A stretch of DNA of 63,671 nt, the filler included, from Olpidium bornovanus S191 (lineage: Eukaryota > Fungi > Olpidiomycota), in the NCBI GenBank assembly GCA_017911155.1. It is 28 parts of 28 records of this genome, joined end to end, with 100 filler letters (N's around TTAATTAATTAA, not from the genome) between each part and the next. Parts side by side here need not be neighbours in the genome. Positions count along the whole stretch, not along the records: positions 28,364 to 30,937 come from JAEFCI010002911.1; 27 more parts are not named here. One strand, given 5' to 3'. This document shows, piece after piece, positions 28,264 to 30,937 of the stretch (positions within the stretch are counted from its first letter, which is position 1; each line of letters begins with the position of its first letter). The notes under the pieces were generated by a model, which was not told the origin of the DNA, did no database searches, and saw only the letters and a list, made by a program, of their open reading frames with translations. The translations under genes and the position numbers were made by a program.

Positions 28264-28423
28264 NNNNNNNNNNNNNNNNNNNNNNNNNNNNNNNNNNNNN
28301 NNNNNNNTTAATTAATTAANNNNNNNNNNNNNNNNNNNNNNNNNNNNNNNNNNNNNNNNNNNNCATGCCAGCTTTATGTCAGACGGCGATTCGCCGGTTG
28401 CGGAACCGAATCGAACGCCTTAC

Positions 28424-30937
28424 CGTGATAAAGAAATCCGGTAACCCGTCCATCTTGCGCACAAGGGCTGTGGAACTGTGCACCCAAATGGTGGACCCGT
28501 CCTTCTTGCGGTATTGCAGCTCGTTCGTGTGGCTCTCGATCTCGCCGGCGACGATGCGGTGCATCTGCTCCATTTCTGCCTCGAGAAACTCGGCCGAGCA
28601 CAGGTCGTGTATGGAGAGCTTCTTGAGCTCGCTTTCGGAGTAGCCGAGAATCTCTTGCATTCGCCGGTTGGCCTTGAGCCAATTGCCCGGAGGGGACACG
28701 TGCGCGATCCCGACGGCCGCTTGGTTGAACGTTACCGCGAGCTGCCGGCGCGACGCCTCGATCTGCTCCTGGTACCTCTTGCTTTCCGTGACATCGTTCA
28801 GCATTACGATCACTTCCGAGACTTCGCCATCGCTGTCCTTTACCGGCGAGAAGTGGCTCTGGATCCAGCGTTGGCGTCCCGTTGCAAACGGCGGGAAAAC
28901 GTCTATCTCGACCGGCGGTACTGACATCTTTTCACCGGCAAACGCACGGCGGACCTGGTCCGCAATGCCGAGCCCTTGCAGCCGCGGATCTTGGAGAATG
29001 TTGTAGCATCCGCAGGGAGGATCGTCGGCCAGGCCCCACAGGTGATGCCACGCGAGATTCACTCGGGTGATGTTGCCAGAAGGGTCGTATAGCTCCGTCG
29101 CGATCGGGCTCTGGTCCACAATGGTTTCGTATTTCTTTTTCAAGAGCTCCGCTTGTTTTGGTTCGTGGATGTCGGTGGCGGTGCCAATCCACTTCCGCAG
29201 GACCCCATCTGCGTCCCTCCACGGTACATACTTTCCGAGGAACCACCGGTATTCCCCAGTTCGCGATTTGAGCCTATAAGTCGCCGTCCAGGGGATGCAC
29301 TGCGCGGACGACTCGTACCACGTCTTCAACAAGATAGGGTGGTCGTCCGGATGGACGAAGTCCGAGAAATTTTGCTCTGATCGAGATGATCCCGTGTAAT
29401 CAACCCAAGTCTGGCTGCAGTTTCGCCCCAAGGCAACTCAGCAACCTGACAATCATAACACCGAATAAAAAACTCCGGATTGCGGGATTTACTTTAGGTA
29501 CACCTGTTTTCCGTCCGCGCGGGCCTGCCATACGATAATGGGAATGGACTCGGCGAGCTGTAGCACCTCGGCGGTCCGTTCAGTCACGCGCTTTTCCAGG
29601 TTTTCCTTGGACTTGAGGAGCTCCTCTTCGGCCTGCTTCAGCGCTGTGATGTCCTGCATGACGCCGATGATTTGGATAGGCTCGCCGTTCTCGCCGCGTT
29701 GGAAAACGCCCTCGCGAAAAAGGGCCCATCGTAACTCTCCGCCGGCATGCTTGATCTGTAACGTGAATTCAAGGAAACTGCCGTCCGCCATGGTTGAATA
29801 TTCCGCCTACGCGAGAGCGAAAAACAAAAAAAAAAAAAAAAAACCTGCCGTCGTTAGCGAACGGCGTTTAAAACGTTTTCGCCTCGTGTCCAAACACGAC
29901 CAACCGACCCGGTGGGAGTCTGGGTGTAGAAAACTGAGCGTGCTTTGGTCGAGATTTTTCGTCTGGCCCTCGGAGACTCCGAAGAATTCCATCGAGCTCC
30001 TGTTCATGTACTCACAACGCATGTACCGGAGGTCAAAGATGTATATGTTGTTTGGGACCAGAGTGGTGACGCTCTCGGCAAACTGACGGGCATTCTCGGC
30101 CTTGCGACGGGTCTCCTCCAGGACCGCCTCAATCCTTTTCCGATCCGAAATGTCGCGAATAATGTAAGCGAAGTACAGCGTGCCAGACTGCTCCCATGTG
30201 GTAATCGACATCTCTATGGGGAACTCCGTCCCGTCGACGCGGCAGCCGACAGATTCGATCGTGCGGCCAAACTCCGGCCCGGTGTCGTCGCGCGCGTGGG
30301 CGGCGAGGCGCTCCTCGTGGGCGGCTCGCAGGCGCTTGGGGAGAAGGTCGACAAATTGCAGGCGGAGCGCGCCTTCGGTGGAGCGCCCAAAAATCCGCTC
30401 CGCGCCGGCGTTCCAGGTGATGATCTGGCCGGACGTTTTCGTGGCCAACAAGGCGTCGTTTATGGACTGCAGGAGGGACTGGTATTTCCCTTCGGTGGCC
30501 TGCAGGGCCTCTTGGGCTTCCTCGCGGAGCATGTCGCGCATGACTACAACGGCGCCAAGTTTTCTTCCCTCCTTGCCGTACATGGCACGCCCAGAGCAAA
30601 GCAGCCTGGTCCTCCGTCCGTTGCGGGATTCAACGACGATCAGGTCATCCTTGACATGCTCACCGCGGAACGCGCGCAAGAGCGGGATATGATCTTCCGG
30701 GAGCGGTGTGACCCCGTCGGCGCAAAAGAGCCGATAATAACTCGGCCACTCCTTGCTTGTTAATGGCATCTCCCCGACTCCATGAAGCTGTGGGAGAGAA
30801 GATTCCATTTGATTTATTCCAGACCATACACGAGTCGCAAAGGACGTCTTCGTTACAAACGTCCACAGACCTCCCGTGCAGCGTCATTGAACAAGGTGAG
30901 AACACCCTCGCTGTTGCAGGCGACGACGCTTTCCATG
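28424..30937 (-). CDS. Multi-PAS sensor protein fragment (at least 6 PAS/PAC domains, about 750 aa), probably part of a hybrid histidine kinase; truncated at both ends. Exons 30871-30937, 29909-30787, 29493-29806, 28424-29414
   Basis: Repeated PAS-PAC signatures (WNAGAERIFG, VHPDD, GEYRWFL, RKKDGSTIWV, D[IV]T/S ends). Three GT-AG introns restore the reading frame. No kinase domain lies within the contig. Confidence 0.9.

What the first reader, a model, noticed from the sequence alone, without database searches (positions are those of the whole stretch)
30146..30487. Second PAS unit keeps FixL/EcDOS heme-binding residues: possible fungal gas sensor
Seen: LLPKRLRAAHEERLAAHARDDTGPEFGRTIESVGCRVDGTEFPIEMSI, with the His codon at 30317-30319. 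Established: EcDOS (LIPRDLRPAH...GMSREL) and FixL (LMP..YR.EH...IG..R.V.G.RKDG.TFP) use this His as proximal heme ligand and an FG-loop Arg to stabilise bound O2. Both appear to be present (AAH; FGR). Inference: an O2/CO/NO-sensing module inside a eukaryotic multi-PAS receptor, plausible for a swimming spore in hypoxic soil water. Many PAS domains with this pattern have not been shown to bind heme.
Basis: partly seen in the sequence, partly recalled or inferred. Interest (0 to 1): 0.7.

Follow-up and report, generated by a model that had tools for sequence, protein, structure and literature searches.

The report
Candidate heme-binding PAS unit, Olpidium
One unit of a spliced, expressed multi-PAS signalling gene attributed to the root-infecting zoosporic fungus Olpidium belongs to the same PAS family as the bacterial heme sensors FixL and DosP and keeps their iron-binding histidine, but it lacks their oxygen-holding arginine, so it is a reasonable untested heme-sensor candidate, not a clear oxygen sensor.

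Summary
The piece is a whole 2574-bp contig labelled Olpidium bornovanus. It carries part of a minus-strand gene with four GT..AG introns. Spliced contigs from public runs confirm three of them and the splice site of the fourth. The fragment encodes six tandem PAS units.

Unit 2 is a PAS S-box domain of the FixL/DosP/FG214 family. Its best PDB matches by sequence and by AlphaFold2 model are all heme-PAS domains. Its His falls in the column of the proximal heme ligand.

Two controls weaken the reading. Family members without the His match FixL even better, so that resemblance is a family trait. The Arg of 'FGR' is out of register: it sits at the DosP Met95 / FixL Ile218 position, and the FixL Arg220 / DosP Arg97 position is Ile. 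FixL's propionate anchors (Arg206, His214) are absent, and a Tyr replaces the small residue at FixL Gly251.

In favour, all 25 closest domains keep the His, and FG214 binds heme without that Arg.

Verdict: heme binding about even odds, canonical O2 sensing unlikely. It is a new member of a known kind, already predicted at family level in 2023. Output domain unknown.

The parts
30871..30936 (-). Exon fragment, cut by the contig end, encoding the start of PAS unit 1 (ESVVACNSEGVLTLFNDAARE)
   Evidence: Translation. Spliced contigs in runs X1 and X4 join 30871 to 30787. A 1407-nt transcript contig runs on beyond 30937.
30788..30870 (-). Intron 1, 83 nt, GT..AG
   Evidence: Joint 'skips 83, CT..AC' in X1 and X4.
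29909..30787 (-). Exon 2 (293 codons): rest of PAS unit 1, all of PAS unit 2, first half of PAS unit 3
   Evidence: and contig pieces.
30128..30499 (-). PAS unit 2 (124 aa), a FixL/DosP-type S-box PAS domain.
   Evidence: PF00989 1.3e-14 and TIGR00229 2.2e-18. PDB best hits are FixL at 5e-11, FG214 and DosP. AF2 pLDDT 88.4; Foldseek FixL TM 0.92, rmsd 1.5 A.
30317..30319 (-). His codon (domain position 61, fragment residue 179) on helix F-alpha; candidate proximal heme ligand
   Evidence: CAC. Aligns with FixL His200 and shares the column of FG214 His156. His in all 25 closest domains.
30263..30265 (-). Arg codon of 'FGR' (position 79), at conserved Gly+1 = DosP Met95 / FixL Ile218; not the canonical O2-binding Arg
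   Evidence: R or K at this position in 19 of the 25 closest domains.
30257..30259 (-). Ile codon (position 81) at the FixL Arg220 / DosP Arg97 position
   Evidence: PMC11543664 calls this Arg universally conserved in heme-PAS domains and required for O2 binding.
30164..30166 (-). Tyr codon (position 112) on strand I-beta, at the FixL Gly251 / DosP Ala128 / FG214 Ser position
   Evidence: G/A/S in 395 of 526 family domains, Tyr in 4.
29807..29908 (-). Intron 2, 102 nt, GT..AG; contains an 18-nt homopolymer run at 29826-29843
   Evidence: X1 and X4 contigs jump 29805 to 29908. The NCBI model P0001 splices the same intron.
29493..29806 (-). Exon 3: second half of PAS unit 3, helical linker, start of PAS unit 4
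29415..29492 (-). Intron 3, 78 nt, GTAAAT..AG
   Evidence: Joint 'skips 78' in X1 and X4.
28424..29414 (-). Exon 4: rest of PAS unit 4, PAS unit 5, most of PAS unit 6
   Evidence: Pfam PAS_3 2.2e-29 and PAS_4 2.6e-23, three stretches. Contig pieces.
28364..28423 (-). Start of intron 4 (donor GTAAGG), cut by the contig end
   Evidence: Transcript contigs leave the genome sequence at 28422 and continue with letters that read VAEDISQRKK in frame, a typical PAS C-terminus.

Best explanation
PAS unit 2 is a FixL/DosP/FG214-type PAS domain ('cluster 3' of Xing et al. 2023). It most likely holds a b-type heme between helix F-alpha and the beta-sheet, with His179 (codon 30317-30319) as the proximal iron ligand. 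Its distal pocket is not the FixL/DosP one. The G-beta Arg that holds O2 in those proteins is Ile. A basic residue (Arg197, 'FGR') sits two positions earlier on the flexible FG loop, where DosP has its axial Met95. A Tyr (Tyr230) projects from strand I-beta where known heme-PAS domains have Gly, Ala or Ser. If heme is bound, the module more likely reports redox state, CO or NO, or binds O2 through a different hydrogen-bond donor, than acts as a FixL-like O2 switch. A ligand-driven change in the FG loop and sheet would pass through the C-terminal helix (DISDRKRIEAVLEETRRKAENARQFAE) to the following PAS units and to an output domain that lies off this contig. Shown: homology, fold, His register, splicing and transcription. 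Inferred: heme binding, ligand identity and signalling.
For: (1) All PDB sequence matches below 1e-2 are heme-PAS domains, FixL at 5e-11, FG214/10jx at 2e-8 and DosP at 4e-4, with the His under FixL His200.
(2) The AF2 model (pLDDT 88.4) superposes on FixL at TM 0.92, rmsd 1.5 A over 122 columns. The first 25 Foldseek matches are all FixL, FG214 or DosP.
(3) The 25 best single-domain relatives all keep the His, and 19 of them have R or K at position 79. In members without His the residue is Phe or Leu, consistent with an inward-facing side chain.
(4) Xing et al. (PMC10468136) find this His to be the only residue contacting heme in all structures of the cluster and propose heme binding for the roughly 60% of members that carry it.
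(5) FG214 binds heme through this His although it has Leu at the FixL Arg220 position, so that Arg is not needed for heme binding.
(6) Distal hydrophobic positions are kept: Met97 for FixL Leu236, Ile99 for Ile238.
(7) The domain is not degenerate. It departs from 6 of 31 conserved family columns; the family mean is 4.9, sd 3.1.
(8) The gene is real. Spliced contigs in two runs from separate studies confirm three introns and the splice site of the fourth.
Against: Family members without the His match FixL as well or better (3e-12 and 9e-15), so similarity to FixL says nothing about heme and the case rests on one residue. The Arg described as universally conserved in heme-PAS domains and required for O2 binding (PMC11543664) is Ile here. 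FixL's propionate partners Arg206 and His214 align with Ala and Pro/Glu. Tyr at the Gly251 position is very rare (4 of 526) and could fill or obstruct the pocket. Position 83 is Ser where 230 of 288 comparable His-bearing domains have Leu. No ortholog above 45% identity exists to test conservation. No member of the query's own sub-group (R/K at 79, V/I at 81) has been tested, as far as I could find. The FG loop of the model is low-confidence (pLDDT about 66). I could not inspect model coordinates for a cavity.
Confidence: 0.5

Rival explanations
1. It is a PAS domain of the same family with no heme. The His is kept by descent or for a structural or other-ligand role. The unit acts as a cofactor-free or small-molecule-binding relay or dimerisation module in the PAS chain.
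For: About 30-40% of the family lacks the His yet is otherwise equally conserved (PMC10468136) and resembles FixL equally well. The query lacks Arg220, Arg206 and His214 equivalents and carries Tyr at the Gly251 position. Multi-PAS proteins commonly contain units with no known ligand (my own knowledge).
Against: The His is kept in all 25 closest domains. Tested His-bearing members of the cluster (FixL, DosP, FG214) all bind heme. A buried His replaced only by Phe or Leu in other sub-groups suggests a pocket role.
Confidence: 0.38
2. One reading: a canonical FixL/EcDOS-like O2 sensor in which the 'FGR' Arg is the residue that hydrogen-bonds bound O2.
For: The His is in register. An Arg is present in the FG loop, a segment whose Gly+1, Gly+2 and Gly+3 positions supply distal ligands in DosP, FG214 and FixL respectively, so it could in principle reach the distal site.
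Against: The register is fixed by the conserved Gly78, Glu82 and Asp-Gly turn, with 28 residues from His to Asp in all four proteins. The Arg is at the Met95/Ile218 position and the Arg220/Arg97 position is Ile. In DosP, O2 binding needs Arg97 (PMC11543664).
Confidence: 0.12
3. The contig does not come from Olpidium. It comes from another eukaryote in the non-axenic zoospore preparation, so 'fungal' is wrong while the domain analysis stands.
For: The assembly came from non-axenic zoospores washed from cucumber roots and was binned by tetranucleotide composition (PMC7865070). The contig is only 2.6 kb. Six or more tandem PAS units are reported for oomycete kinases, whereas the one chytrid sampled has 1-4 per protein (PMC10468136). 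All relatives found are bacterial-like or unnamed.
Against: The authors describe conservative binning plus BLAST and MMseqs filtering. No protein above 45% identity exists in 1.8 billion representatives, which argues against a well-sequenced contaminant. A bacterial origin is excluded by four spliced introns.
Confidence: 0.15

Closest known systems
FixL heme-PAS domain (Bradyrhizobium japonicum / Sinorhizobium meliloti; PDB 1DRM, 1D06, 8JS5)
   Same: Best sequence match in the PDB (about 28-30% identity, E 5e-11) and best structural match (TM 0.92). Same length from His to the Asp-Gly turn. His in the His200 column. Hydrophobic residues at Leu236 and Ile238. S-box C-terminal motif RD(I/L)(S/T)xR.
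   Different: Ile instead of Arg220, Ala instead of Arg206, Pro/Glu instead of His214, Tyr instead of Gly251, Arg instead of Ile218. Eukaryotic, intron-containing gene with at least six PAS units. No kinase domain seen on the contig.
E. coli DosP (EcDOS) heme-PAS domain (PDB 1V9Y, 1S66, 9BGV)
   Same: Same family (E 4e-4; TM about 0.8). His in the His77 column. The motif L(I/L)P(K/R)xLRxAH is nearly identical. Conserved Gly94 and Glu98 equivalents.
   Different: The query has Arg where DosP has the axial ligand Met95, and Ile where DosP has Arg97. It has Tyr where DosP has Ala128. The output in DosP is an EAL phosphodiesterase.
FG214 heme-PAS one-component regulator, Fimbriimonas ginsengisoli (PDB 10JX; bioRxiv 10.64898/2026.03.15.711900)
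   Same: Same family (E 2e-8; TM 0.82). Proximal His156 is in the same column. Like the query it lacks the Gly+3 Arg (Leu there) and still binds heme.
   Different: FG214 is bis-His (distal His175 at Gly+2, where the query has Thr) and has the H..H motif and Ser at position 112. It is a bacterial HTH transcription factor.
Unnamed bacterial/metagenomic S-box domains with the motif LMPERF(R/H)xAHxxGLxRF...(I/V)G(R/K)T(V/I)EL (e.g. P0025, P0009, P0002)
   Same: Closest relatives (40-45% identity). His kept in all; R or K at Gly+1 and V or I at Gly+3, as in the query.
   Different: All have G, A or S at position 112, Tyr at position 39 and the TGE loop motif. They are bacterial-type proteins with histidine kinase or class III cyclase outputs. 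None found to be characterised.

Membership tests
PAS fold / PAS S-box (PF00989, TIGR00229) | Profile match above the curated cut-off | tested here: met
   PF00989 54.6 bits (cut-off 22.6), PAS_9 49 bits and PAS_4 45.9 bits. TIGR00229 66.6 bits (cut-off 22.9).
PAS fold / PAS S-box (PF00989, TIGR00229) | Five-stranded antiparallel sheet flanked by helices | tested here: met
   AF2 model has strands 16-21, 25-29, 80-86, 92-104 and 107-116 and helices including F-alpha 55-69; pLDDT 88.4.
FixL/DosP-type heme-PAS ('cluster 3', Xing et al. 2023) | Closest sequence and structure relatives are FixL, DosP and FG214 | tested here: met
   Members without the His meet this feature too, so it places the domain in the cluster but does not indicate heme.
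FixL/DosP-type heme-PAS ('cluster 3', Xing et al. 2023) | His on F-alpha in the proximal-ligand column (FixL His200, DosP His77, FG214 His156) | tested here: met
   HMMER alignments; codon 30317-30319.
FixL/DosP-type heme-PAS ('cluster 3', Xing et al. 2023) | Arg at the start of G-beta that hydrogen-bonds bound O2 (FixL Arg220, DosP Arg97) | tested here: not met
   The position is Ile81 (30257-30259). The Arg is at Gly+1. FG214 also lacks it.
FixL/DosP-type heme-PAS ('cluster 3', Xing et al. 2023) | Heme-propionate partners (FixL Arg206, His214) | tested here: not met
   They align with Ala67 and Pro75/Glu76 (roles from PMC10765370). Other basic residues lie nearby (Arg64, His68, Arg70, Arg79), but their equivalence is untested.
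FixL/DosP-type heme-PAS ('cluster 3', Xing et al. 2023) | Hydrophobic distal residues on H-beta (FixL Leu236, Ile238) | tested here: met
   Met97 and Ile99.
FixL/DosP-type heme-PAS ('cluster 3', Xing et al. 2023) | Small residue on I-beta facing the pocket (FixL Gly251, DosP Ala128, FG214 Ser) | tested here: not met
   Tyr112. G/A/S in 395 of 526 family domains, Tyr in 4 and Phe in 7. That the side chain faces the pocket is inferred from strand alternation, not from coordinates.
FixL/DosP-type heme-PAS ('cluster 3', Xing et al. 2023) | Binds heme (Soret spectrum dependent on the His) | not testable with these tools
   Needs protein expression and spectroscopy.
FixL proper (O2-regulated histidine kinase partnered with FixJ) | Full-length equivalog match with a HisKA/HATPase output | tested here: not met
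   NF041777 gives 48-82 bits against a cut-off of 850, a local match to the heme-PAS region only. The output domain lies off the contig.

The most novel reading that the evidence does not exclude
A zoosporic fungus has a heme-based sensor whose PAS pocket differs from every characterised heme-PAS domain. It would have the proximal His, no G-beta Arg, a basic residue at the DosP Met95 position and a distal Tyr on I-beta, the Tyr possibly donating a hydrogen bond as distal Tyr does in globin-coupled and H-NOX sensors. It would sense O2, NO, CO or redox state during zoospore life or root infection. To my knowledge this would be the first FixL-type heme-PAS sensor shown in a fungus.
Probability: 0.25. 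Interest if true: 0.6.

Novelty: new member of a known kind. Interest (0 to 1): 0.38.

Why it matters
Heme-PAS gas and redox sensors are well understood in bacteria. The eukaryotic histidine-kinase review I read (PMC6944256) lists no heme-PAS sensor among fungal or other eukaryotic histidine kinases. A working example in Olpidium, the zoosporic lineage placed closest to terrestrial fungi, would show that this bacterial sensing chemistry was carried into a eukaryotic multi-PAS receptor. It would also offer a pocket variant (Arg at Gly+1, Tyr on I-beta, no Gly+3 Arg) for studying how ligand selectivity is set. If the domain is heme-free, it becomes a useful counter-example to the published rule that cluster 3 plus the His predicts heme. 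The family-level prediction already exists, so this is a candidate for testing and not a discovery.

Tried and rejected
1. I first took 'best PDB hit is FixL' as evidence for heme. I rejected it after controls: Phe61 and Leu61 family members hit FixL at 3e-12 and 9e-15.

2. I looked for orthologs to test conservation of His, Arg and Tyr. The word-index search, the exhaustive representative search, the metagenome locus scan and a search with exon 4 gave nothing above 45% identity, and no eukaryotic ortholog.

3. I tried to recover the output domain. Transcript contigs extend 898 nt (C-terminal side) and about 1340 nt (N-terminal side) beyond the contig, but the tools show only 30 letters of them. 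The spliced 750-aa protein has no reference, so it could not be sent to the length-limited protein search and I did not type it in.

4. I tested whether the domain is degenerate. It is not: 6 of 31 conserved columns differ, against a family mean of 4.9.

5. Bacterial contamination is rejected by four introns, all supported by spliced contigs.

6. PF24820 (Diguanyl_cycl_sensor) matched at E 0.015, below its cut-off, and was not pursued.

8. The raw poly(A) RNA run X24, which shares the species label of the holder runs, had no reads on the stretch with 6% of the run read. This is uninformative.

9. Cavity and side-chain geometry of the AF2 model could not be examined because coordinates are not exposed.
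Full report
**What is on the piece.** Places 28364-30937 are a complete 2574-bp contig. The identical protein P0001 is NCBI's 'MAG: hypothetical protein BJ554DRAFT_5816 [Olpidium bornovanus]', seen on one contig of 2574 bp. All coding sense is on the minus strand.

**Gene model.** Reading frames shift at three places where canonical GT..AG introns restore continuous PAS-domain sequence. A fourth donor (GTAAGG) sits 60 nt from the contig end. My model has exons at 30936-30871, 30787-29909, 29806-29493 and 29414-28424, with introns of 83, 102 and 78 nt. It gives a 750-residue open fragment, cut at both ends.

**Transcript evidence.** Logan contigs of two public runs from different studies (X1, X4) are spliced at exactly these junctions: 'skips 83' and 'skips 78', both CT..AC on the plus strand, and pieces 29493-29805 / 29908-30789. 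They leave the genome sequence at 28422. The letters that follow read VAEDISQRKK in frame, a typical PAS C-terminus.
- A 3086-nt contig carries 898 nt beyond the C-terminal end of the piece, and a 1407-nt contig carries about 1340 nt beyond the N-terminal end.
- The gene is therefore a real, transcribed, spliced eukaryotic gene that is considerably longer than the contig.
- 'Second PAS unit' is true only within the piece.
- The run type of X1 and X4 is a guess by the tool, but a spliced form can only come from RNA.

**Domain content.** Pfam finds PAS-family domains throughout. I count six units in the fragment, joined by helical linkers ending in D(I/V)(S/T)xxK-type motifs. No output domain is on the contig.

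**The observation.** The quoted peptide is present. 30317-30319 is CAC (His) on the minus strand, and the interval 30146-30487 coincides with the Pfam PAS hit.

**Family placement.** The 124-residue domain (window 30128-30499, minus strand) matches TIGR00229 'PAS S-box'.
- Against all PDB sequences its significant hits are only heme-PAS domains: FixL (5e-11), FG214 / PDB 10JX (2e-8) and DosP/EcDOS (4e-4). 10JX is a heme-bound PAS structure according to its preprint.
- An AlphaFold2 model built on 82 aligned relatives has mean pLDDT 88.4. Confidence is lower only at the N-terminal end and in the FG-loop region, the 71-80 block, at about 66.
- Foldseek places FixL first (TM 0.92, rmsd 1.5 A over 122 columns). 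The first 25 matches are all FixL, FG214 or DosP.
- This is the 'cluster 3' of Xing, Gumerov and Zhulin (PMC10468136). They report that the F-alpha His is the only residue contacting heme in all structures of the cluster, that about 60% of members have it, and that those members 'may bind heme'.

**Control.** Two relatives that lack the His (P0067 with Phe, P0040 with Leu) match FixL at 3e-12 and 9e-15, better than the query. Resemblance to FixL is therefore a property of the whole cluster and is not evidence for heme. The argument rests on the pocket residues.

**Register of the key residues.** From the His to the conserved Asp-Gly turn is 28 residues in the query, FixL (His200 to Asp228), DosP (His77 to Asp105) and FG214 (chain His87 to Asp115). 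The numbers come from the alignments and the residue numbering. A conserved Gly (query G78, FixL G217, DosP G94, FG214 chain G104) and Glu (query E82, DosP E98) anchor the FG-loop/G-beta junction.

| Position | Query | FixL | DosP | FG214 |
|---|---|---|---|---|
| Gly+1 | Arg79 | Ile218 | Met95 (axial ligand) | Glu |
| Gly+2 | Thr80 | Gly219 | Ser96 | His175 (distal ligand) |
| Gly+3 | Ile81 | Arg220 | Arg97 | Leu |

The DosP structure paper describes that residue as universally conserved in heme-PAS domains and required for significant O2 binding, and here it is Ile.
- FixL's propionate partners Arg206 and His214 align with Ala67 and Pro75/Glu76.
- The distal hydrophobic residues Leu236 and Ile238 are kept as Met97 and Ile99.
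- FixL Gly251 (DosP Ala128, FG214 Ser) is Tyr112 in the query. This position is G, A or S in 395 of 526 non-identical family domains, Tyr in 4 and Phe in 7.
- By strand alternation, and by analogy with pocket-facing residues of LOV domains (my own knowledge, not checked on coordinates), this side chain should point into the pocket next to Ile99.
- The query also has Ser83 where 230 of 288 comparable His-bearing domains have Leu, Leu57 where most have Phe or Tyr, and Thr20 where most have Val. These could offset the added bulk of Tyr112, but that is speculation.

**What favours heme nonetheless.**
- Among 526 domains from the two searches, His occupies the column in 71%.
- All 25 domains that score best against the query as single domains have it.
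- 19 of those 25 have Arg or Lys at Gly+1 with Val, Ile or Met at Gly+3, so the query belongs to a coherent sub-group (alignment).
- Where the His is absent it is replaced by Phe or Leu, and in two relatives by Cys. This fits an inward-pointing side chain.
- FG214 shows by crystal structure and mutagenesis that a member without the Gly+3 Arg binds heme through this His.
- The query is not a decaying copy. It departs from 6 of 31 columns conserved at 70% or more, and the family mean is 4.9 with sd 3.1.

**Weighing.** I put heme binding at about 0.5. A canonical FixL/DosP-style O2 sensor is unlikely (about 0.12) because the Arg position is not met. If heme is bound, then redox, CO or NO sensing, or O2 binding through Arg197 or Tyr230, is more plausible. 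About 0.38 goes to a heme-free PAS unit. None of this can be settled without spectroscopy.

**Source organism.** The assembly came from non-axenic zoospores washed from cucumber roots and was binned by tetranucleotide composition with similarity filters (PMC7865070).
- The stretch occurs at 99% identity or more in the three runs I laid that hold it (X1, X4, X13). The word index finds it in runs of four named studies under three coded organism labels, one of them with only a small share.
- No protein above 45% identity to unit 2, or 31% to exon 4 over most of its length, exists in the collections searched. The closest relatives are bacterial-type or unnamed.
- Introns exclude bacteria. Another poorly sampled eukaryote cannot be excluded (about 0.15).
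- Eukaryotic multi-PAS proteins with cluster-3-like units do exist, for example a 3439-residue diplonemid protein among the hits. Xing et al. also note cluster-3 PAS domains in Acanthamoeba, Thecamonas and Capsaspora.

**Novelty.** The domain is a new member of a known kind, with a pocket variant. The family-level prediction that the His implies heme was published in 2023. A review of eukaryotic histidine kinases lists no heme-PAS sensor in fungi (PMC6944256), so experimental confirmation would be a first of moderate interest.

Noticed in passing
window 30788-30808 and 29484-29495: The deposited gene model (P0001, 405 aa) starts at an ATG inside intron 1, so its first seven residues MESSLPQ are intron sequence. 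It runs into intron 3 to a stop (…VYLK*). It misses exon 1, exon 4 and everything beyond. The spliced contigs show the true junctions.
   Followed up: yes
window 28364-28423 and beyond both contig ends: Transcript contigs in run X1 extend 898 nt past the C-terminal end and about 1340 nt past the N-terminal end of the contig. The next exon begins VAEDISQRKK. The full protein may reach about 1500 residues, and its output domain is unseen.
   Followed up: partly
window 29826-29843: An 18-nt homopolymer run (A on the plus strand, T on the coding strand) lies inside intron 2. The read-laying tool skipped 29810-29854 as a repeat.
   Followed up: no
P0002 (ENA metagenome protein, 494 aa): This close relative (41% identity) carries two tandem His-bearing PAS units of the same sub-group, followed by a class III adenylate/guanylate cyclase domain (PF00211). 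The sub-group is therefore coupled to cyclase as well as kinase outputs.
   Followed up: no
P0050 and P0070 (relatives of the same sub-group): These two have Cys in the column of the candidate heme-ligand His (…RELCAEGL…). Either a thiolate ligand or loss of the ligand is possible.
   Followed up: no
window 28364-30937 in public runs X1-X14: The word index finds the stretch in runs of four named studies under three coded organism labels, one with only a small share. The three laid runs that hold it (X1, X4, X13) match at 99% or better. A raw poly(A) RNA run with the main label had no reads on it. This suggests the main label is a host or environment in which the gene's owner is sometimes present.
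   Followed up: partly
window about 28980-29010 (PAS unit 5): PAS unit 5 contains a Cys-Gly-Cys motif (…DDPPCGCYNILQDP…). I did not check it against known metal-binding or redox motifs.
   Followed up: no
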